A DNA stretch of 57,406 nucleotides, filler included, from Platydemus manokwari (Eukaryota), in assembly GCA_037951405.1 (NCBI GenBank). It is 5 parts of 5 records of this genome, joined end to end, with 100 filler letters (N's around TTAATTAATTAA, not from the genome) between each part and the next. Parts side by side here need not be neighbours in the genome. Positions count along the whole stretch, not along the records: positions 44,412 to 57,406 come from JBBMOY011885832.1; 4 more parts are not named here. The stretch is one strand, 5' to 3'. A program made the position numbers and the translations under genes. The number at the start of each line of letters is the position of its first letter. Within the stretch, counting starts at the first letter, position 1. Shown here piece after piece: positions 44,412-57,406 of the stretch. Below the pieces are notes generated by a model, which worked only from the letters and a program-made list of their open reading frames with translations, did not search any database and was not told where the DNA came from.

Positions 44412-44726
44412 CTAGTTAGGAGAACATTGATGAGTTCATTCTATTAGCTATTTTTGAAGTTTGTATGTTTGTTTGTGTGTTAGGAAAATTTTTTAGTATG
44501 CATTGAAGAACATGAATGAGTACTTTTCATATTGAATGCATTAGAGATCACAAGATAGAAATAGATAAGAAAAGGAGAAAAATTTTGCATTGTACAATAT
44601 TGTCTTCATATGGATAAGTAATCTTCTTCCAATTATAATAAGATTTTTGACTTTCCAACTAAGATTATTTGAATTATGTCTATTAATAACATCGATGAAA
44701 TTTAATGGATTTACTTTTAACTGGAT

Positions 44727-45368
44727 ATGTATGTCAAAAGATCTAAGAAGATCTCAATCAATATAACATGGAATTATTCAAAATCACAAAGCACCACTTT
44801 CAAATCAGAAACTCGCATTCTGTTCATTAATAGTAATTTCACCACAGATAAATCTGACTCTCAATATGCCACTTATTCGCCCAACGAAGGAATACAAACC
44901 GGGGTTGTGCTAGGCTCGGTATTGCTCATAGTTTTTATTTATGGAATTATAAAAGCAAAATGCAAACGTAAAAGTGAATTATATGAAAAAGAAATGATTC
45001 GAAAATCTAGAAATGATCCTCATAAAATGTGGGATTTATCTAATCAGCTGCTGAAATTCAAAAAACGACAGTCACTAATAAAAAAATATGGACATCTTCA
45101 TCCTCCTATCGACCCAATAAAAGATAAACAGCCAATATTTTTGAAAAGATTATCGAGTGTTAGAAATTGGTTGCATAATTATGTACCCAATAAATCAACT
45201 GATAACTCTTTAGCAAAAAACCAATACTCATTTTCAGATTTGGCTATCTATGTTACACCTGAAAATAGCACTAATCAGATTTTACAAAGTAAAACCTTTG
45301 AAATGTACTCTTTACCCAAAGGAAAATTTACTCAATCAGTATGTAGCCTGAATTTTGACTCAATATAA
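44727..45368 (+). CDS. Single-pass membrane protein of unknown function (213 aa)
   Basis: Three N-glycosylation sequons (NIT, NYS, NFT) precede the hydrophobic GVVLGSVLLIVFIYGII, followed by basic KAKCKRK. AATAAA at 45415-45420. Confidence 0.7.
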   Translation: MYVKRSKKISINITWNYSKSQSTTFKSETRILFINSNFTTDKSDSQYATYSPNEGIQTGVVLGSVLLIVFIYGIIKAKCKRKSELYEKEMIRKSRNDPHKMWDLSNQLLKFKKRQSLIKKYGHLHPPIDPIKDKQPIFLKRLSSVRNWLHNYVPNKSTDNSLAKNQYSFSDLAIYVTPENSTNQILQSKTFEMYSLPKGKFTQSVCSLNFDSI

Positions 45369-45627
45369 TGTAGATATTATTCAAACCTAATTGCTTATTT
45401 TTATATTTTATATAAATAAAATTTAGAAAAATTTAATTAATATTATGTTTGAAATTATTAAAATAAAATAAATTATTAACAAAAATTATGATTATTAATT
45501 TTAATAAAAAGAAGTTTCTTCAATTAATTCAATTTTAAATAAATTAGAATATTATTAAGCTTGTTTTAATACACTAATTTGTATTAAATTTATTAAAATT
45601 CATTGCTACTAGAAATTACCATTAGGA

Positions 45628-47354
45628 ATGGCAGGAAGACAAATTGCACAAATAGCTATTGATGAATATGGTAGACCGCTTGTTATTTTAAGAGATGAAG
45701 AAAAGAAAAAGAGATTAATTGGAATTGAAGCTCATAAAGTATTAATTATTTTTTTAAATTTGTTTTTAACTTTTTGATTGATTTAGTCACATATTATGGC
45801 CGCTAAGACAGTTTCCAATATCTTACGTACTTCTCTTGGGCCAAAAGGATTAGATAAAATAATGGTCAATCCTGATAATGATATTACAGTTACTAACGAT
45901 GGAAGAACCATTATGGAAATGATGGATGTAGAACACGAGATTGCTAAATTGATGGTTGAACTTAGTAAATCACAAGATGACGAAATTGGTGATGGGACAA
46001 CTGGTGTTGTAGTTTTAGCAGGTTCATTGTTAGAACAAGCTGAGCAATTGTTAGATCGTGGCATTCATCCAATTCGAGTTTCTGATGGTTATGAAATGGC
46101 TGCGAAATTATGCTTAGATGAACTTGATAGAATCAGTGATACATTCGTTTTCAGTCGAGAGAATAAAGAACCACTTATTCAAACTGCAATGACTACCTTA
46201 GGATCAAAAATTGTTAATAAGTGCCATAGGCAATTTGCAGAAATGGCTGTTGAAGCAATTTTGTCTGTAGCTGATATTGAGAGAAAAGATGTTGACTTTG
46301 AGTTGATTAAAGTTGATGGTAAAGTTGGTGGAAGTCTTTCAGATTCTATTCTAGTTAAAGGTGTAATTGTTGATAAAGATTTTTCACACCCACAAATGCC
46401 AAAGTCAATCAAAGATGCAAAGATAGCTATCTTGACTTGTGCTTTTGAACCACCAAAACCAAAAACCAAACATAACCTCTACGTAGAGACTGTTAAAGAT
46501 TACGAAAATCTTGCAAAGTATGAACACGACAAATTCGTGGAAATGGTTGATCAAGTTAAAGATTCTGGTGCAAATTTAGTCATTTGTCAATGGGGATTTG
46601 ATGATGAAGCTAATCATTTATTATATCAAAAAAATTTACCAGCTGTAAGATGGGTTGGTGGACCTGAAATTGAATTGATTGCCATTGCCACTGGTGGACG
46701 AATTGTGCCAAGATTCGAAGAATTAACATCAGAAAAATTGGGTAAAGCTGGAATTGTTAAAGAATTATCTTTTGGAACAACTAAAGATAAAATGCTTGTT
46801 ATTGAAGAATGCAGAAATTCCAAAGCAGTTACATGTTTTATTAGAGGTGGTTCACGTATGATTGTCGATGAAGCCAAACGTTCATTGCATGATGCTCTTT
46901 GTGTTGTTAGAAATTTGGTATGATTGATTTTTGATTATTTTTTAATTAATTTATAACAAATCAGGTCAGGGATCCACGAGTTGTATATGGTGGTGGTGCA
47001 CCTGAAATCGCCTGCTCCCTTGCCGTTTCTAATGCCGCTGATCAAATTCCAGGTTTGGAACAGTATGCTATGAGAGCATTTGCAGAAGCATTGGAAGCTA
47101 TACCTATTGCTTTGTCAGAGAATTCCGGTTTGCCATCAATTTCTACGGTGGCTGAATTAAAAGCTAGTCAATTGAAAGAACAAAATCCAAGATTAGGTGT
47201 GGATTGTAAACGCGTAGGAACAAATGACATGAAACAACAACTTGTTCTTGAAACTCTTAGTTCGAAGAAGGCACAGATAATGTTGGCTGTTCAAGTTTGC
47301 AAAATGATCTTAAAGATTGATGATATTCGAGTCCATGCTGAAGATGTAAGTTAA
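45628..47354 (+). CDS. CCT5: T-complex protein 1 subunit epsilon (543 aa); exons 45628-45738, 45787-46917, 46965-47354
   Basis: [97 protein letters not shown]. Introns of 48 and 47 bp; AATAAA at 47537-47542. Confidence 0.98.
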
Positions 47355-48679
47355 AATAATTGTTTTTCAAATAATCCGTGTTGTCATGTTATTCAGAAAT
47401 AGCTATTTCTGTTGTAAGTGACTCGCAATATTGTTTATGTTTATAATTTATCGTTTGTTAATGTTTTTTTCATTTCAGCTTGGATCCATGTATTAAATTT
47501 GAGAAATAGTGTTGTCAAGTTGTAAATGTTTATGTTAATAAACATGGATAAATATTGTTTGTTTTATTGCAACATATAAAATATTGCTATGGTATTCGAT
47601 GCTTTTGTGCATTTGTTTTATATTTTGTATTACTTCATTTTTGGAATTTAATCTACGTTAATCTTTGTTTTGAGATCTTTATTGAATAACGTATTTTGTC
47701 TGTTTATTGTTTAATTTCAAGATTGAGTGACAAATTAGGAATCTTGTTTATGTCATGATTCTGAATTCGTGTGTGCGAAAGATTTAGGTTTTGATCATTT
47801 TATAGTGTTAATTGTTTTATTTTTGAGTATGTTTGCTCTACTTATGAAAACCAAAACTGTTTTAAATGGAATGATTATTGATATACTGCTTACTAATTTT
47901 TTTGTAGGAACAGTTTATATTAGCACAATTTTTCATTGACTCCATATGAAAGGACTTGTAAATTCTGTGAAGACAATTCAAAATAAAATTTAGAATTAAA
48001 AAGGTGTTTGTATACGTCAGAATTAGCACAATTTATTACTGAAATAGACATGAGAATGTATAAACTATTTAAATTTAATAATGTAATATAACGACAAAAA
48101 TTCAATGTCAATGAGCAATGTTTGGTTATATTTATCATTTAAATGCTTACGCAGAAAAATGATTGAAAACTATCAAATTATTATTTTTAATTTAATCTTG
48201 CTATTTGCAATTGGTGTATGGCGATGATCTGCAAATCAAATCTAGAATTATATAAATAATATGATTTTTTATGGCTTCATTAGCTAGTGCAGCCGTGTAA
48301 TGGGTTTGGTATATTTCAGTTGTTACGCGATGCCTTATCTAGTTCATTTTTTCATTTTATATTAGTATAATTTATATTAATTTTGTTCTTATTATTTAAT
48401 CTCATGTTACGAGAATAGTACTTTATATTCCCATCCATATTATTAATTTTTATTTATTTTTTAATACATAAAGATATATTATGAAAGTTTCACAAAATTT
48501 AAAGTGACAGATATACTTTTGATATACATATCAATAAAATATTATCAAATAAACCATTAATTGTCAAATAACGATTAACATCAAATTAGTATTAAGTTGA
48601 ATTGTTTGGTATGGATTTTGTTAAATTGAACATCTTTGATAACTATTGTTTCAAATAATTATTTATATAACATGGTTTT

Positions 48680-51600
48680 TCTAATACAAGTAAGACATAG
48701 TCTAAAATCTTCACCACTAAGTGGTAGGGCATTTTATTACAGGTAGTCTCTTCTTTCCTTCGTCACTCATAGATAGGCTGTTATCATTGGCTCATCCAAG
48801 TTTGCTGGACATCTCATCTTCACAGTCTACAAAGTCATCGTCCGAGATGTCATTGTGATCATTTGATTAGGTCCTTGTATTCGAAAAGAGTCTGGCTTTC
48901 CTTCAGTGAAACTGCTATTGTTTAAATGCAGAGTCGAAGTATAACTTGCGTTTTTCGATTACCAGGTTCCAAGTACCCTCATTAAGAAGGTACGGAGCTC
49001 AACCGTTCAGCCTGTTCTTGGCTTTCTTTACTTCCTTTCGTAGATTTTCGTATTTTTGCAAGTTGACTTCATCTGCATTTTTCATCAGTTGCTGTTCGTC
49101 CATGGGGCATTTGACGTCGACTAAAAAGATACAACTACTGTGGTTATTGACTACCGGTAATTTCAATCTCAACTTTGATCCCATGAATTGACAAGCATTT
49201 TCCACCTTAAACGTCGTTGACAGTATGATTGTTTATATATCCCGCAAGTAGTTCCATTATTTTCATGTACAGGTTGAGTATATATGAGTGTGATAAGTTG
49301 CATTTTGTAAAGACATGGGTCTGAGATTCAACTTCGTAGAGATATTTCCGGCATTAGTCCTCTTGCATATGTTTCTTGTTGAGAGTTACCAATGTATTTG
49401 ATAGCATTTGGTGTAGAAATATGAACTCAGCAATTTATAGCCCACTATTGAAAAAAAACTTTTTCCGCGCAGATGTTATTTCAGGCAGGATTTTGGTTTA
49501 CCGACTACATTGGATCTCCTATGACCATAGGAGTTGATAACTTCAATGAAAACATTGCCGTAATAACTTCGTCAATTTCTTAAAGTGTTTCGTTCCCCAT
49601 GGTATCTCAGTAGATACATCCCCTTCGTCCGTTGTGATGCATTGGAAGACTCTGATCCTAATCTTGCCATCGATAATTTGGAAGCTGGTTGATGTGATGA
49701 TATGATATCTTATCGAATTTTGTCCCACCAAGAGTGCTTCTTTTGTCTGATCCCAGGATGGGAGTTCAGCCAATTTAGGAATTCCAAGAAATTTTGGTTG
49801 GATTGCGAGTATAAAGATTCTTTTACAATTTCGTTGATAATTGTTTGTTTACTGTTCAGTATTGCTATTCCGTTTGATATTGTCTGGATCATAAATTTTG
49901 CTACAATAATCCGTAACCTGCAGCCCCCATTTGATTTCGTTGTATATAGGAAGTGAGTAGAGAACGATTTTGGTACACCGATAATTTTCTTTAGAACTTT
50001 CCGAATTTATGTGTTCATTTTCTTCAGCTTGATGTATGTTGCATAGTATGTCCTAGCAAAAAATATCACTTTATTATGAATAAGCATGCTGTAGGTATGG
50101 AGTTTTTGCCAGGGTAGCAGAATACTGTCAGCGAGTTTCTCAGATAATGAATTGAGTTCAACTTCTAGGCTTTCGAAGGAGTTGTGTAGTTTCTGTGTAA
50201 ATTTGACTCCCAAGTATCTAGAATGTTCTTCAGGTTGCATCTGTGGTAATTGTTGGCCATTGATCGTCAGGGCGTTGATTGCTTGTCTCGATTTGATATT
50301 CCATACATGGCTGCACTTGTTGGGCTTTAACTTAATGCCTGGTTAGTTCACGATCGGTAATGATAGATTGATTTGATTCTGGCATTTTTCTTCGTTTTTG
50401 GAGATGTTTGCTATGTCATCTGCATAGGCAAGTGTTGTAACTCGATGGCTTGCCAGCATGATTTCCGGTATTCTGTGATTGTTCCATTTGTATTGGGATC
50501 GGGTTTACGGCAATATTGAACAAAAGCATGGAGGTAGGGCAGCCTTGCCTAACTTTTCTTCTAATGATAATAAAATTGGTCGTATAATTCTTACACTGGA
50601 ACGCGATCTGGCAATTATCAAATAGGCTTCGAATAATTTGTATTGCTGTCAAACTAAGACCCATTTTTTATAATATAGCAAAGAGTATAGCATTATTGAC
50701 TAATGGCAATGTCTCTTCGATATCAATAAAAAAGAATTTGACATTATTCTTAGTATTCTCGTGCAGTTTTTCAATGGCAGCCCTCAAGATGAAGTTGTAT
50801 TCGCTGCATCCATGGCTTGGTCCAACCCTTTTCTGCAGCGGGTGTAGAAGATTGTTTTAATTGATCCATGAATTGCGTTGATCCAGGTCTCCAAGAACCA
50901 ACTTGATAGTATTGATCTTGTTTCATTGGATTGGGAATCATTGTGGTATAATATTTATGCCACTCATCGAGAATTGATTTTAAATTAAGGCAATTATTAA
51001 AGATAGTCGTCATAATCTCTGTATTTGGACCTTCATAAATCATATTTCCATAAGTGATCTTGCTTCTACATGGTGCACTAGGCTTCTTATCTTTTAGTAC
51101 CGCATAAATTTCCTCGATATTAAAATTTTTGAACTCAAATTTTGGACCCTTTTTAATAAGATTATCCAACATGCATGCATTCTCACATGGTTTGGAGCAT
51201 CTTACTATTAAATGTGCCTCGCCTTGTTTTCTGATATAGTGGTTTCCCAGATCCTATTTCGGAGGGCAATAGTATGTATCATTGGAGCTCGTAGCTATCT
51301 GAAATGCAGAATCCGGGACAATTTTATACAATTTTCACAAACACAAGTCATTTTTTCCTCTATCGGTTGATTGATCGACTCGCCCCATATAAGAGCTGGT
51401 CTCATCTTTGACCACACATAGTCCTCCGACAAAGGCAATAAATAACTTGTATTTTTCATCCAATGGTACATTTTCAATTTTGCAATATAGTTCAGTGACC
51501 AAGATTCTCCGTGTATCAATGATGGTTCGAGGATTATTATTGGTCACTGGTAACATAAGATTCTCCAAGTTCTTTCTCTTATCCTCGCTTAGAATAATTA

Positions 51601-52740
51601 ACTTCTTGGCTTTTTCTTTGATCGTTTTGACATTGATTATTCTCTGGCTGATAATGGAGCAGATATTTTGATGTATCCAAATACAATGGGGCCACTGTCT
51701 CCGAATTGAGTTTGGGTTAGTTTAGTTGGATTTTGATCCTTTTCAAGCAAAAATATTTGGCTTTCCGGACAATATGCTTTAATTTTTATTGGCATTCGAA
51801 ATCATCTGTTGGTGTTCTTCAGTAATGATATCGCACATCGGATCCATGAAAGAAATCGTTTCATTCCTAACATTAACTTTCACCAGGGTTCATTGTTTTG
51901 ACTTCAGAAGTGCTTGACAAAATATTAATTCGTGATCTTTGAAAAATCTAAAATCAAGGTTATGGATGATGTCCGTCACTTTGTTCCTCGTTATCGCCTC
52001 ACTGATAAACGGGTCAAGTACAAGATTTCTTCTCTGTCTGAATTCACTTCAGATCAACAATCGCATGTGTTTTTCGGAGAAGAGCGCATAATCGTCTTTG
52101 TTCGTAAGTGTTTCTGAACCATCTCCTATTTTAGATAGACTTTTGACCATTTTTCTATTGACATCTCACACTTTCTGACAAATTTTCTCAATGTTGATTG
52201 GAATATTATCATCTTCTGATATGATAATTTCGGCGTAACCACAGGTCATTGGTCCACAGTCATTACTGTTCGTTTGACATTTCCGCATTTTAAAATTGAC
52301 AGATTGTTGTAATATCATGTTCATTCTGCTCATTGATTGGTTTATGGTGTCAAACAAGATCTTCCCTTTTTCCATGGCTCTGGATACATACGGACTTTGG
52401 TCTCCAAGTGGGTCGATTATTTCGACTGAAATGTTGATCGATCCGATAAAGAAAGTCCAGTGCGTATTTGACACATTGACTGAAGCGATAATGATATCGA
52501 TTTGTTGAGATATTTCAAACCATGCTGTAGCTTCCTCAAGTTCTTTATTATACTGGAATATCGCCTCAGTCTGGTACGAATCGATATAAAGAACTTTTAG
52601 AATGTTTTGATTCGCAGTCACATCTATTTGGTCTTTATAAGGTTTAAATAATTATGAATATTTTGCAGATATTTGAGTAAAAAGGGTTTTTTCATTCATG
52701 AATTCATGTTTATAACAAGGCCATCCACCAACTTCTTTAT
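48680..52740 (-). mobile_element. Decayed RLE-type non-LTR retrotransposon (NeSL-like) with Ulp1/C48 protease, RT, CCHC finger and RLE
   Basis: In order on the minus strand: NTHW..IIDPLG..QTNSNDCG, PSAP, SWRP, FIDI, VRQGCPTSMLLFN, LAYADDIA (~50412-50435), LKPNKC, RYLGV, GGC, CRK..ESQTHVFTKC, LVDVKCPMD. Many frameshifts; element ends are approximate. Confidence 0.88.
52166..52621 (-). CDS. Ulp1/SENP-like (C48) cysteine protease domain of the retrotransposon ORF
   Basis: Catalytic His (NTHW), Asp (IIDPL), oxyanion Gln and Cys (QTNSNDCG) occur in clan CE order within an open 151-codon frame. Confidence 0.82.
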   Translation of the reverse strand: MTANQNILKVLYIDSYQTEAIFQYNKELEEATAWFEISQQIDIIIASVNVSNTHWTFFIGSINISVEIIDPLGDQSPYVSRAMEKGKILFDTINQSMSRMNMILQQSVNFKMRKCQTNSNDCGPMTCGYAEIIISEDDNIPINIEKICQKV

Positions 52741-55700
52741 CCTAATAACAAAAATCTGTAATCGATATATTTGAAAATGATATTTATAAATCTATTACAA
52801 TGAGAGACGCAAATCATCAAATGTTGTAGTTAACACCAAATTTACACCCACACATTTTTCTGATAAAACTCTGTGCCATAAAATAAAACTCATTGTTAAA
52901 ATTCATTACCAAAATCCGACAATGCCACGCCTTATTAGTTTAAATACAATAATAACGTGGTGTGAAAAATAATACCAAATATTAAATTATCTTCAAATCA
53001 AATTAATACAACAACCTAATTACGTGTTTATTGCAAACTATTCTTATGCATTCTGCATGTATTTGCGGATTTATTAAATAAAAATATAAATGAGATTGGC
53101 TTATCATTTCTCTTGTATTTGGTTGTATTTATTCGGTTGCTCGTGATTTTATTGGTTCGAGGAAATACTTTGGTATCTTATATATGGGAATACAATTATA
53201 TTGAGCATGTGTTGTTAAAAGTTGTTATCAAACTCAACGGTGTGAGTTCAGTGAATGTAAATTGATTGATTAAAATGCAGGGAACTACAAACTCTTTATT
53301 TTATTTTTAGAATATCAAATAACACAAATATAATTATTTATGATACATTTTTATTGATCAAGAAATTTACAACACAGGCACGTAAACCTAAACTACGTTA
53401 AAATCTATGGTAGAGTTACCTTACCCAGAGCCCAACAGTTAATTTAGGACCTTAAAGATTTTAAAGATACAGATTCTTGTTTATATTTTATTACGTTTTC
53501 AAAGGGAAATATCTTTTTGGCAAGTTATTATTTTTAAATTAATAGATACAAATATAACTAAAATTTGAGATTTGAATTATGGCATATTTCATTTTCTTCA
53601 GTTCATACAATTTATTTGCTCCAATCGAAAGACACTGCTGAAAATGTTAAGAATTCTAAGCGATTTTTACAAGAGGGATTTTTTCTGAAATTTTCGGTTA
53701 CTTATTTATACAAGTTTGATTTAGCTACTTTGTACTCGATGATTAATTTAAAATCTTTGAAATTCAAGTTGTTTTTGGTACCTTGTATCGATAATCATAA
53801 CTTATTTTGATATTTTTTATCAGCTTATTCTGATTTATATTATAACATGTTTTATCTCTTTAAAAAGTTTTATTTTTAAACTTAATTTCTTGAATATAAA
53901 AATGAAAATTCTATCCTTTTTATTTACAAAATTTATTATGAAAATCAATCTGTACAAATAAAAATTAATCGACTATCATATTTGAAAAGTCATTTTTATC
54001 AATAATCAAATATTATATTAATTAATAACAAATATCGAATAATTAAAATCATTTGGCGGATTGGATTGTATTATGTTGTATTGGGATATTTAAAATTGGG
54101 ACTTGCCTGGCATCCTTTGTCTCTAGGCAAATATTGTGGTAAGAGTTTTTACACGTCAAGATCTAAACTTGACGCTCTTCATCTTCTGCGGGTTTCTTCC
54201 TGTATCCAATCTTTCAATTTCCTTTCCGACATTCGTTTATTTTGTTTCAACTTTTCTGATCCCTTTTTTTAATTCGCCTTACGGTTTCCAAAGTTTATGG
54301 GCCTTTCTTTCCTGATCGTTGTCTTCACTTGTCAATTCATATTTTTCTGTTGATTTTTGGTATTATTTCGGCGTTATTCTTCTTCAATTGATCAAATGAT
54401 CTCACAGAGTAGGGCATCATTTCAAAATCTCCTGTTTTCTGCCAGAATACAGCTCAGGTAAAAATAATCAACGAAATTTCAAATCTTGGATACCTTCGAT
54501 AAAGGTAGAAGTTTTCTTTAATTCAAGTTTGTCTCAAAGACTCATCAGTTTTATTTTGGTTTTGTTCGAGATAAAGTCAAGTAGTTGATTTCTCAAGAGA
54601 AAAAACCTTTGCTGAGAAAACAGGAAGTCTTTGCCTTTTTTAAAGAGAGGATTTTATTCTGACAAACGCAATGCAAAGCTTCAGAGATAAGAAAACAAAG
54701 CGGAGTCTATAAATTCTGTGAAGGCAATTCAAAGTAAAATTTAGAATTTTAAAGGTGTCTGTATACGCCAGTTGACTAGTTGTACAGTTGTGTGGTACCA
54801 ATCGTAAGTGTTTTTGTGCTCAAACTTATTTGAGGAATATTTTATTTTTAGAGCAAATCTTTATTATTCTCTAGCAATTTAAAAGTATAATTGAATATTT
54901 AAGCCAAGAGTCAAATAATTGTGTAAAGGCTATAATAGTCATTAGGCTATATTAAGTTGATGTCCGTTGAGATAAGTAATCAAACGAGTGTTAATAAGTA
55001 ATTCGGAATCACTAAATATTTGTTGACACCATGTACTAATTAGTGGGATACTCTAAAACTCAACACAGTATCTCAAAAATACAACCAAAACTTGGCTTCG
55101 AGCTTGCAGTTCGCCATCTTTACAGAGGTATTTATACTTGAGATTTGTGTGTCATTTTTGTATCACTCTTGTATCACACTTTGATTTGATCTTTAACTTT
55201 TCAAGTTTTTATTGGATTTATTGGTTTTGCATGAGCGGGATTGGTCAATCCTTATGTGTGTGTTACTATGTGTCTATAGCCTTTTTCAAATTACCATTTT
55301 CCATCTAAGTTAACTGTGATTGATTGATTGCCATGCTTGCATGGTTGTGTAGGCATGAAAATGATTAAAGTGCTAAAACAAGAGTTCCAATATCCAAACC
55401 CGGTTTTCTTTCGTCAGATTTATTCTGTACTTAACACCAGAAAATTAGTAACCTAAGTAAATAAATAAACAATAGGAGAGCTAGAGTACACAAAAATCAA
55501 ACAAATCCACATTTTCACAACAATTATGTGATGAGTTATTTTATAATCACAATCAACTATTATCATATCCTCTGATAAGATTCAAAGTTTTTTACCGAGT
55601 CCATTTATGCTCATCTCAATAATTTACATCTACCATAAAACCTAATTTCAATTAAATACAAAACATTTTATGAGTTAAATATTAGCTGACTACCAATTTC

Positions 55701-56202
55701 GACAATATTATTACAAGAACACATGGTTTTTATTTACTACACAGAATGCGGGGCAGTGATTTTATTATCATTTATATTCGGATATCAACATTTTCTCTGA
55801 TTATTTTATTTTAAATTAATTTCCTCGAATTTTCCAAAATAATATAAAAAATTAATTAAACTTGGATCTTCATTAGAAAATATTGATGGAACAATTGTGA
55901 TAAAATCAATGCACGTAAAATCAAATTACGAAACTTGATAATATAAATACAATTTTTAGATTTCTACCGGTACAGATATAAAAACAAAATCAGATACAGT
56001 AAAGTATCATTTTAATCATAAAAATATCGTTTCATTCATTGGAGTGTTAATCAGAATTGAGCGTTAATTTATTACAGTAATTTCTTTTCCTCAAATATTA
56101 AATTTTCAACATCATCATTTCCGCAACTGTATTTTTTGAGTAATACTTGCATCATATAAGTAGAATGTTTGTCAAAGATTCCATTAGAAACTATTCTCAT
56201 CG

Positions 56203-56556
56203 ATGGAATCAAATATTTCAGTTAAACAAATCATCAAATTATTTGATAATGTTAATGAAATATCACTTGATAATGTTAATGAATTATCGCGTGCGAAACA
56301 AAATTTAAAATTTAAATTGCTAACAAAAACTTTTAATAAAACCATTTCCAATAATTGTAAATCAAATGAATCCGAAACAAATGTCCAAAGAAGATGGGCT
56401 TCACTAGTGGCAACTCGAGGCAAAGGTCAAGTTCCGTGGATCCGAGAAGTTGTTGAAAAAAAAATAACGACCATGAAACCAATAAATTACAGTTGGATAG
56501 ATGAATTGGAAGTCCGAAATTGTAGTCTATCGAAAAAAGTTTTCAACAATAATTGA
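56203..56556 (+). CDS. Possible small protein or exon of unknown function (117 aa)
   Basis: Open frame with protein-like composition, an internal DNVNE duplication, and an upstream ttag acceptor at ~56184-56187. No recognised domain. Confidence 0.3.
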   Translation: MESNISVKQIIKLFDNVNEISLDNVNELSRAKQNLKFKLLTKTFNKTISNNCKSNESETNVQRRWASLVATRGKGQVPWIREVVEKKITTMKPINYSWIDELEVRNCSLSKKVFNNN

Positions 56557-57406
56557 CAATTTAATAGATAAAGCATTGCAGTATTATTCAGTAGTGTTTT
56601 TGCCAAGCATAATCAATGTCGTTTTTGCTCTATTTTTCTTCGGCGCTACACATTTTGTTTCTATTTTATATCTATATGTAATAAAGTGTTTATTGAATGC
56701 AAACAATCCTATTTTATAAACACTAGAAGTTTGAATAAAATATCATTTCAAACCTACGTGAGAATCTTTGATAACAAGTGACTATAAAACTAAGCGGTTA
56801 CAATTTTATGTATTAAAATATAGGAACCATTATTTTATTTATTATTTATTCTCATTGGTATTTTTCGATGTGGTAATGGCAGTGTATTTTCAAAGGAGTT
56901 ATTTTGTCGTTTATTTTTTTCAGATGAAAGGTATTATAAAATGTCATCGTATAGATATAGTGATTTATATTTATTGATGATTTGATAGAATTTCGAGTTG
57001 GGTTCTATATTTGGTGATGTATATCAATAAATCAACAATAATTTATAGGTTATGTATTTCTTAAATTAGTAATACACTTTAGAGCAGATAGTTGTTGATT
57101 CCATGAAAGATCTGGCATCTGACAGATTAATAGGTGCATGCTATTATATATGATAGTAAACAAGATAAATTGTTATAGATATATTGTTAAAATGTGCTTA
57201 ACAAATGCGAACGCTTTTTAAAATTAACAGAGAAGATGTAGTGTTCTGAAAGTATGAACAATCTTCGGAGAAAACTAATAGTATTATACTGCGATATTGA
57301 AAAATAATATTACGTGTATTAGTATGATCCCGGCTTTTACAAAAATGAGTTAAAATTTGTATTTCAATGAATAAATTTAATTGTTATCATTTATTAATTG
57401 TAAGGT

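What the first reader, a model, noticed from the sequence alone, without database searches (positions are those of the whole stretch)
48680..52740. Non-LTR retrotransposon carrying a Ulp1/SENP (SUMO-protease-like) domain with intact catalytic motifs
Seen: a C48 protease module (H-W, D-P-L, Q-x-N-x-x-D-C-G) lies upstream of and co-oriented with RT, CCHC and RLE motifs. The protease frame stays open for 151 codons while the RT is broken into shorter pieces. Known: nematode NeSL-1 elements carry a similar protease, and SUMOylation takes part in transposon silencing in several animals. Inference: this is a NeSL-like family whose protease could deSUMOylate host silencing factors (an anti-silencing cargo) or process its own polyprotein. 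Whether this family is already described cannot be judged from here.
Basis: partly seen in the sequence, partly recalled or inferred. Interest (0 to 1): 0.7.

Follow-up and report, generated by a model that had tools for sequence, protein, structure and literature searches.

The report
Dead flatworm retrotransposon with Ulp1-like protease
This is a long-dead copy of a jumping gene in a flatworm genome, of a known general type that carries a SUMO-protease-like domain. Its intact relatives elsewhere share a conserved layout (one active and one inactive protease domain joined by a Gly-Gly linker), which suggests the protease cuts the element's own protein.

Summary
On the minus strand, about 52650 to 48700, lies one non-LTR retrotransposon with the order Ulp1/C48 protease, RT, CCHC knuckle, restriction-like endonuclease (RLE). 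The C48 piece passes Pfam's cut-off (25.1 vs 20.7 bits) and keeps His, Asp, Gln and Cys.

The linkage is not chance. The whole stretch is colinear with at least 9 intact metagenome proteins of 1250-1540 aa that have the same architecture.

The copy is dead. It has about 15 in-frame stops and 7 frameshifts, and 30 of 93 family-invariant residues are lost. There is no AUG upstream of the catalytic His. The 161-codon open protease frame is within chance; another 160-codon open stretch exists.

The host is a flatworm outside Neodermata (CCT5 tree). The RT lies outside true R2, in a supported clade beside Utopia/NeSL-like elements. This fits the planarian R5/LIN lineage, but no curated references were available to test that.

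New at family level:
- The clade carries tandem C48 domains. d1 is catalytically intact. d2 has Cys replaced by Ser and His usually lost, but the Trp kept.
- A conserved (I/L)xGG or GxG motif sits in the disordered linker after d1. I read it as a likely self-cleavage site.

DeSUMOylation of host silencing factors remains untested. The element itself is ordinary; the family detail is modestly novel.

The parts
48680..52740 (-). Whole decayed non-LTR retrotransposon copy. The ends are approximate; protein homology runs from 52588 to 48887.
   Evidence: Frameshift-aware alignment to P0006, P0019 and P0002. Colinear tblastn. GC 0.37 inside against 0.24 and 0.27 in the flanks.
52169..52651 (-). C48/Ulp1-like protease domain d1, a stop-free frame of 161 codons. 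H-W at 52457-52462, D-P-L at 52406-52414, Q..N..DCG at 52253-52276. The first Met is at codon 93, after His and Asp.
   Evidence: Pfam PF02902 25.1 bits against cut-off 20.7. 56% identity to P0001. The model matches SENP1/SENP2, probability 1.0, TMq about 0.6. Coordinates.
52118..52129 (-). I-G-D-G in the linker after d1. It is the counterpart of the conserved (I/L)xGG or GxG motif of intact relatives, the candidate self-cleavage site.
   Evidence: Motif table. G206 is invariant in alignment A1. The linker is disordered in the P0004 model. Coordinates. A stop at 52166-52168 lies between d1 and this motif.
51640..52048 (-). Second, inactive C48-like domain d2. D-P at 51836-51850 and Q-T-Q-F-G-D-S-G-P at 51688-51714 (Ser in place of the catalytic Cys). 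It is broken by a stop at 51890-51892 and by frameshifts near 51790 and 51660.
   Evidence: Family C48 HMM and hmmalign. d2 clade at SH-aLRT 95 including the window's d2. Breaks.
49713..51172 (-). Reverse transcriptase (fingers, palm, thumb), in three frames with internal stops. YADD at 50415-50426.
   Evidence: RVT_1 fragments. tblastn to P0006 at 27-45% identity. RT tree. Breaks.
49300..49353 (-). CCHC zinc knuckle upstream of the endonuclease. The second Cys position now reads Tyr.
   Evidence: Family invariants C1087, C1090, H1099 and C1104 mapped onto the window.
49020..49223 (-). Restriction-like (PD-(D/E)xK) endonuclease core. D-V-K is kept at 49110-49118, and the first family-invariant Asp is replaced.
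   Evidence: tblastn to P0006 residues 1103-1170, 37% identity. Invariant mapping.
48680..48960 (-). C-terminal tail of the ORF and presumed 3' UTR. The 3' end is not defined, and no poly(A) or simple repeat was seen.
   Evidence: Sequence read. Alignment ends at 48887-48962. No tRNA or Rfam family at the junction.

Best explanation
The stretch is one old, inactivated insertion of a restriction-like-endonuclease (RLE) type non-LTR retrotransposon in the genome of a free-living (non-neodermatan) flatworm. It lies 1.3 kb downstream of the CCT5 chaperonin gene, on the opposite strand. In intact relatives a single ORF of 1250-1540 aa encodes, in order: a short N-terminus; an active Ulp1/SENP-like C48 protease (d1); a disordered linker with a conserved (I/L)xGG or GxG motif; a second C48-like domain (d2) that has lost the nucleophile (Cys to Ser) and usually the His but keeps the Trp and Asp; about 190 aa without zinc fingers; RT; a CCHC knuckle; and a PD-(D/E)xK endonuclease. 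By homology to R2, the element moves by target-primed reverse transcription (inferred). I infer that d1 cuts the polyprotein after the Gly-Gly of the linker. This parallels Ulp1/SENP cutting SUMO precursors after GG, and CE-clan viral proteases (adenain, ASFV pS273R, poxvirus I7L) cutting polyproteins at GG/AG-X. The cut would release the protease from a d2-RT-RLE protein. A further trans activity on SUMO or ubiquitin-like conjugates is possible but not shown. In this window none of it works: the copy is riddled with stops and frameshifts. The stated confidence applies to the identity of the element. For the self-cleavage mechanism I would give about 0.45.
For: Identity and linkage:
- The C48 hit is above the Pfam cut-off.
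- The whole 3.7 kb is colinear with P0006, P0002 and P0019, in the order C48, C48-like, RT, CCHC/RLE.
- Pfam finds C48 plus RVT_1 in P0002, P0005 and P0006 and in further relatives.
- The ESM Atlas holds clusters of 50 and 102 members with RVT_1 plus C48.

Decay:
- About 15 stops and 7 frameshifts against each of three references.
- 63 of 93 family-invariant residues are kept.

Clade:
- win_RT is sister to P0006 (SH-aLRT 90), inside clades supported at 99 and 97 that hold the tandem-C48 proteins.
- This clade is separate from the Phytophthora, Trichinella and arthropod (Utopia-like) clade and from a basal R2 clade.
- That basal clade is true R2: its members score 327-348 bits to solved R2 proteins, against 175 bits for P0006 and P0088.

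Tandem domains:
- Shown by the family HMM and column alignment.
- The d2 domains form one clade at SH-aLRT 95, nested among the d1 domains.

GG motif:
- GG is found 44-48 residues after the catalytic Cys in 9 of 12 relatives, and GxG in the other 3 and in the window.
- The Gly is invariant in A1.
- The linker has pLDDT below 50 in the P0004 model.

Fold: Ulp1, SENP5, SENP1 and SENP2 are the top matches.

Host: the CCT5 tree places the window in a flatworm clade supported at 97, outside Neodermata.
Against: - No curated NeSL-1, R5, LIN, HERO, R4 or CRE references were available, so clade naming rests on a few named proteins (Trichinella, Phytophthora, ants) and on PDB R2 scores.
- The node joining this clade to the Utopia-like clade is weak (SH-aLRT 83).
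- win_RT is a long branch (1.52) with biased composition.
- No other copy from the host genome could be examined, so the ends, target site, copy number and age are unknown.
- Self-cleavage at GG is an inference by analogy.
- The window and three intact relatives have GxG, not GG.
- d2 is poorly conserved overall (mean pairwise identity 0.19 against 0.28 for d1 and 0.43 for RT).
- Structure models are of modest confidence (mean pLDDT about 65).
Confidence: 0.85

Rival explanations
1. The protease of this family does not process the polyprotein. It works only in trans as a deSUMOylase (or other Ubl protease) that counters SUMO-dependent transposon silencing or assists integration or repair.
For: The d1 fold and catalytic residues are those of Ulp1/SENP. 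Ulp1 domains recur in unrelated transposons (Mutator, Ginger1), where no polyprotein needs cutting and a role in transposition or repair has been proposed (PMC2836005). Trichinella-type and other single-C48 elements lack the GG linker motif.
Against: There are no data on substrates. The conserved GG/GxG in a disordered linker directly after d1 is better explained by a cis site. The Pfam match covers only profile positions 70-185 of 217. The d1 model covers under half of SENP catalytic domains (TMt 0.43-0.46), so canonical SUMO binding is uncertain.
Confidence: 0.25
2. The open C48 frame in this window is a domesticated, host-retained protease gene derived from the element. It would be kept by selection while the rest decayed.
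For: The frame is open for 161 codons with all catalytic residues intact. Nine of 11 d1 invariants of alignment A1 are kept, against 63 of 93 elsewhere.
Against: With about 22 lesions in about 1234 codons, about 2.9 lesions are expected in 161 codons (Poisson P of none about 0.06). The expected longest open run is about 200 codons (my arithmetic). A second open run of 160 codons lies in the RT. The first Met is at codon 93, after His and Asp. A stop follows the domain at once. 9/11 against 63/93 is not a significant difference. No near-identical protein turned up among 1.84 billion representatives; the best hit is 56%.
Confidence: 0.04
3. Chance adjacency: a fragment of a host SENP-like gene lies next to an unrelated RT element.
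For: None beyond the fact that only one copy could be inspected.
Against: One colinear alignment covers C48, C48-like domain, RT and RLE against many independent intact proteins. The window's d1 and d2 group with TE domains. GC is uniformly raised across the whole element.
Confidence: 0.01
4. The element belongs to the R2 clade proper rather than to the NeSL/Utopia/R5-LIN group.
For: Solved R2 proteins are the closest PDB sequences. Databases name many relatives 'R2' automatically.
Against: True R2-like proteins in the same tree form a separate basal clade (SH-aLRT 99). They score about twice as high against solved R2 proteins (327-348 against 175 bits). There is no N-terminal zinc finger or Myb. 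No 28S rRNA sequence lies at the flanks.
Confidence: 0.04

Closest known systems
NeSL-1 (Caenorhabditis) and Utopia-1_TSP (Trichinella): NeSL/Utopia non-LTR retrotransposons with an N-terminal Ulp1-like protease (Malik & Eickbush 2000, from memory; Kojima & Jurka 2015, PMC4640811)
   Same: Single ORF with an N-terminal Ulp1/C48 protease, RT, then a C-terminal CCHC knuckle and RLE. The RT lies outside R2. The Trichinella protein P0088 (C48 plus RVT_1) is among the named relatives.
   Different: The host is a flatworm, not a nematode. This clade has two C48 domains (active plus Cys-to-Ser) and a GG linker motif. P0088 and other single-C48 elements (P0257, P0259, P0078) have one domain and no such motif. 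No spliced-leader or U2 target lies at the flanks. The RT clade is separate from the one holding P0088. C. elegans NeSL-1 itself could not be fetched.
R5 / LIN families of planarians (Repbase R5, LIN9_SM and others; the NeSL-related 'R5/LIN' cluster of PMC4640811)
   Same: Flatworm host. RLE-type. A NeSL-related lineage distinct from Utopia/NeSL proper. This fits the position of the window's clade in my tree.
   Different: Not testable here, because no R5/LIN sequence was available. The paper reports 28S, tRNA-Arg and tRNA-Glu targets for some LIN families; none is seen next to this copy. The paper mentions a protease only for nematode elements.
Ulp1/SENP SUMO proteases (peptidase family C48, clan CE)
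   Same: d1 has the His-Asp-Cys triad, the oxyanion Gln and the H-W Trp. Its predicted fold best matches SENP1, SENP2, SENP5 and Ulp1.
   Different: The domain is shorter (Pfam profile positions 70-185 only). It is embedded in a retrotransposon polyprotein. The substrate is unknown.
CE-clan polyprotein-processing proteases of DNA viruses (adenain, ASFV pS273R, poxvirus I7L)
   Same: Same clan, and they appear among the weaker structural matches. They cut their own polyproteins at GG-X, GX-G or AG-X sites (established knowledge). This parallels the conserved hydrophobic-x-G-G motif after d1.
   Different: There is no specific sequence relationship. Cleavage in the retrotransposon is only inferred.
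Ulp1 domains captured by DNA transposons (Mutator/KI-MULE, Ginger1; PMC2836005)
   Same: Recurrent recruitment of a C48 domain by mobile elements, with unknown function.
   Different: Those are DNA transposons with the domain fused to or beside a transposase. No tandem active/inactive pair has been reported for them.

Membership tests
Peptidase C48 (Ulp1/SENP), Pfam PF02902 | Profile match above the curated gathering score | tested here: met
   25.1 bits against 20.7 for window:52169-52651:-. Relatives score 34-81 bits.
Peptidase C48 (Ulp1/SENP), Pfam PF02902 | Catalytic His, Asp and Cys with the oxyanion Gln, in that order | tested here: met
   d1 has H64, D80, Q126 and C132. d2 does not: Ser replaces Cys, and the His position is lost.
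Peptidase C48 (Ulp1/SENP), Pfam PF02902 | Ulp1-type fold | tested here: met
   Foldseek best matches are SENP1/2 (TMq 0.58-0.61) for the window's d1 and SENP5/Ulp1 for P0004. Model confidence is modest, pLDDT about 65.
Peptidase C48 (Ulp1/SENP), Pfam PF02902 | Isopeptidase or endopeptidase activity on SUMO or another Ubl | not testable with these tools
   Needs an enzyme assay. This copy cannot encode an AUG-initiated full domain.
RLE-type (early-branching) non-LTR retrotransposons | RT followed by a CCHC knuckle and a PD-(D/E)xK endonuclease in one ORF, with no APE domain | tested here: met
   Colinear with relatives whose family invariants are C..C..H..C and D..D.K. APE-type LINEs form the outgroup.
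NeSL clade in the broad Repbase sense (NeSL, Utopia, R5/LIN, YURE) | RT groups with curated NeSL-clade references | tested here: inconclusive
   The RT is outside true R2 and beside the clade holding Trichinella and Phytophthora Utopia-like proteins, but the joining node has SH-aLRT 83. No curated references were in the tree, and HERO, R4 and CRE were not represented.
NeSL clade in the broad Repbase sense (NeSL, Utopia, R5/LIN, YURE) | N-terminal Ulp1-like protease (present in NeSL and Utopia-1_TSP only) | tested here: met
NeSL sensu stricto / Utopia | Insertion into spliced-leader (NeSL) or U2 snRNA (Utopia) genes | tested here: not met
   No Rfam family with E below 0.4 anywhere in the piece, and no tRNA. 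None in the flanks of relative L001. The flanks of an old copy may have decayed.
NeSL sensu stricto / Utopia | One to three zinc fingers at the N-terminus (Utopia; PMC4640811) | tested here: not met
   No zinc-finger Pfam hit N-terminal to the RT in P0002, P0005 or P0006. No invariant Cys or His before the RT in alignment A3.
R2 clade | RT groups with R2; N-terminal ZF/Myb; 28S rRNA target | tested here: not met
   A separate basal R2 clade exists. P0006 scores 175 bits against solved R2 proteins, where true R2-like proteins score 327-348. No ZF/Myb. No rRNA at the flanks.

The most novel reading that the evidence does not exclude
A flatworm-associated clade of RLE non-LTR retrotransposons encodes a self-releasing protease module. 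The active Ulp1-like d1 would cut the polyprotein at the conserved (I/L)xGG in the linker and be freed to act in trans on SUMO or Ubl conjugates, for example those of SUMO-dependent transposon silencing. The Cys-to-Ser pseudo-protease d2 keeps the Gly-Gly-clamping Trp. It would stay at the N-terminus of the RT protein as a binding module for Ubl or GG tails, replacing the zinc-finger/Myb DNA-binding domains that this clade lacks.
Probability: 0.2. Interest if true: 0.6.

Novelty: new variant of a known kind. Interest (0 to 1): 0.35.

Why it matters
A Ulp1-like protease in RLE-type LINEs has been known since NeSL-1, yet its role has never been settled. The family seen here offers a concrete hypothesis that can be tested at the bench. 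It has an active domain, a long-retained inactive copy of that domain, and a Gly-Gly motif in a disordered linker between them. That layout looks like a built-in substrate. It also extends protease-bearing NeSL-like elements from nematodes to flatworms and to many unnamed metagenome contigs. The window copy itself is inert and matters only as a marker of the family in this genome.

Tried and rejected
- Complex prediction of P0002 d1 (1-140) against linker plus d2 (141-345) gave no verdict, score 0.00. This is not evidence either way.
- Pfam did not recognise the window's d2 pieces or the linker pieces. d2 was found only with a family HMM.
- Rfam and ARAGORN found no target RNA gene at the element's flanks or in L001-L003.
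- Self-BLAST found no terminal repeats or target-site duplication, only an unrelated 62-nt repeat.
- The third protein search, seeded with Trichinella P0088, did not return Caenorhabditis NeSL-1.
- Malik & Eickbush 2000 and Burke et al. 2003 are not held in the paper library.
- The metagenome scan returned mostly generic insect-gut RT contigs. Only L001-L003 are near relatives.
- I considered selection on the open d1 frame and rejected it; see the rival explanations.
Broken frames were read with X at each break, inside scripts only.
Full report
**What is there**

The piece (44412-57406) is AT-rich; the flanks have GC 0.24-0.27. It holds a block of GC 0.37 between about 48.7 and 52.7 kb. All coding signal in that block is on the minus strand.

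It matches Pfam Peptidase_C48 above the curated cut-off (25.1 against 20.7 bits). Downstream lie RVT_1 fragments with YADD, a CCHC knuckle and a D..D-x-K restriction-like endonuclease.

**Is the protease part of the element?**

I ran phmmer with the C48 piece against 1.84 billion representative proteins. It found only 11 hits. Three of them are 1266-1537 aa and carry an N-terminal C48 plus RVT_1.

tblastn and a frameshift-aware alignment show that the window is colinear with these proteins from 52588 to 48887, across C48, a second C48-like region, RT, CCHC and RLE. A search seeded on the RT found more such proteins, all unnamed, from JGI, ENA and Logan assemblies. The ESM Atlas holds clusters of 50 and 102 members with RVT_1 plus C48. 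Chance adjacency is excluded.

**State of this copy**

- Each of three references gives about 15 in-frame stops and 7 frameshifts.
- Only 63 of 93 family-invariant residues survive. The second Cys of the knuckle and the first Asp of the endonuclease are among the lost ones.
- The first Met of the open protease frame is codon 93, after His64 and Asp80.
- A stop follows the domain at 52166-52168.

With about 22 lesions in about 1234 codons, about 2.9 lesions are expected in any 161-codon stretch (P of none about 0.06). The expected longest open run is about 200 codons (my arithmetic). A second open run of 160 codons sits at 51253-50774. The open protease frame is therefore no sign of selection. 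The copy is a fossil.

**Host and context**

The gene at 45628-47348 (+) is CCT5, the epsilon subunit of the TCP-1 chaperonin. It is 93-97% identical to an unnamed JGI protein and 79-80% to cestode and trematode CCT5. In a tree it sits inside a flatworm clade supported at SH-aLRT 97, but outside Neodermata. So the host is a free-living flatworm or a close relative. The element lies 1.3 kb beyond the 3' end of this gene, on the other strand.

**Which kind of element**

I built an RT tree of 117 rows, rooted on APE-type LINEs.
- The window's RT is sister to P0006 (SH-aLRT 90).
- It lies inside clades supported at 99 and 97 that hold nearly all the C48-bearing proteins.
- A basal clade is true R2. 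Its members score 327-348 bits against solved R2 proteins, against 175 bits for P0006 and for the Trichinella protein P0088.
- The large sister clade holds Phytophthora, Trichinella (C48 plus RT) and ant, bug and scorpion proteins. These are the hosts in which Utopia elements are described (PMC4640811).

The family is thus an RLE-type element outside R2 and next to Utopia/NeSL. The published tree places the planarian R5/LIN lineage in the same position (PMC4640811). I could not test membership of R5/LIN, because no curated sequences were available. The node joining the two clades is weak (83), and the window's RT is a long branch.

None of the known targets of these lineages lies next to the copy: not the spliced leader, U2, 28S or tRNA genes. 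The family also lacks the N-terminal zinc fingers of Utopia and R2.

An HMM built from the family's protease domains finds two C48 domains in tandem in P0002, P0019, P0014, P0016, P0018, P0006, P0076, P0005 and P0004, and in the window. The column alignment shows the following.
- d1 always has H-W, D-P and Q-x-N-x-x-D-C-G-P.
- d2 has Ser (once Thr) in place of the catalytic Cys in 10 of 11 intact sequences. The motif is D-S-G-P in most.
- d2 has lost the His in most sequences.
- d2 keeps the following Trp in 9 of 11 and the D-P.

The window's d2 (52048-51640) reads Q-T-Q-F-G-D-S-G-P at 51688-51714. It is broken by one stop and two frameshifts.

Ten d2 domains, the window's among them, form one clade (SH-aLRT 95) nested among the d1 domains. 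This fits a single internal duplication followed by loss of the nucleophile and long retention. d2 evolves fast: mean pairwise identity is 0.19, against 0.28 for d1 and 0.43 for the RT. C48-bearing elements outside this clade (Trichinella P0088, P0257, P0259, P0078) have a single domain.

**A candidate cleavage site**

Nine of twelve relatives have Gly-Gly 44-48 residues after the catalytic Cys of d1. It is mostly preceded by a hydrophobic residue two positions earlier (L-E-G-G, I-H-G-G, I-T-G-G, L-I-G-G, I-G-G-G). The other three relatives and the window have G-x-G. The Gly is invariant in alignment A1. It lies in the only long low-confidence segment between the two domains of the P0004 model (residues 195-219).

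Ulp1/SENP enzymes cut after the Gly-Gly of SUMO precursors. The CE-clan proteases of adenoviruses, ASFV and poxviruses cut their polyproteins at GG-X or AG-X (established knowledge). I therefore infer that d1 cleaves the polyprotein at this motif and separates itself from a d2-RT-RLE protein. This is an inference, not a result.

The docking attempt gave no verdict. The structure models have modest confidence (pLDDT about 65) but clearly match the Ulp1/SENP fold.

**Function**

Shown:
- the architecture;
- the catalytic residues of d1;
- the inactivating substitutions of d2;
- the conserved linker motif;
- the decay of this copy.

Inferred:
- TPRT mobility, by homology to R2;
- self-cleavage at GG.

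Open:
- what d2 binds.

Ulp1 domains occur in Mutator and Ginger DNA transposons too, where a role in transposition or repair has been proposed without proof (PMC2836005).

**Novelty and verdict**

An RLE-type LINE with an N-terminal Ulp1-like protease is a known kind (NeSL, Utopia-1_TSP). I found no description of it in flatworms in the searchable literature, nor of the tandem active/inactive pair with the GG linker. Repbase entries for the planarian LIN families could not be checked, so the layout may already be annotated there. I rate it a new variant of a known kind. The window copy itself is an ordinary dead transposon.

**Limits**

Without a run list, read laying could not be used. Other copies in the host genome, expression, element ends and target site therefore remain unknown.

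Noticed in passing
window 45628-47348 (+): Complete host gene for CCT5 (TCP-1 epsilon chaperonin) in two blocks, 45628-46920 and 46953-47348. It is 93-97% identical to unnamed JGI protein P0131, and it places the host among flatworms outside Neodermata.
   Followed up: yes
window 47959-48020 and 54710-54771 (+): A 62-nt direct repeat, 90% identical, on either side of the element (0.7 kb and 2 kb away). It does not extend in self-BLAST. It is probably a fragment of a short interspersed repeat, not part of the element.
   Followed up: partly
window 44727-45368 (+): ATG-started ORF of 213 aa with one hydrophobic, transmembrane-like stretch, upstream of CCT5. Possibly a host gene or exon; not searched.
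   Followed up: no
window 56203-56556 (+), tandem repeat 56243-56288: ORF of 117 aa containing a 24-nt unit repeated twice (95% match). Not examined.
   Followed up: no
protein P0044 (JGI, 1843 aa): An RT protein on the stem of the same larger clade carries an AlkB-like dioxygenase domain (PF13532) and a weak C48-like domain. An AlkB domain in a non-LTR retrotransposon would be unusual.
   Followed up: no
L001 126-5732 (+): A JGI contig holds a relative (P0022). A 719-aa ORF with no Pfam family ends at 2285, and a d2-like-RT-RLE frame continues in the same frame directly after that single stop. This could be read-through, or one recent lesion. This relative has no d1.
   Followed up: partly
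protein P0001 (ENA, 218 aa): This is the closest relative of the window's d1 (56% identity). Its unrelated first 60 residues resemble a SAM-methyltransferase motif (weak CMAS hit). This probably reflects a chimeric contig or a mis-called start.
   Followed up: no
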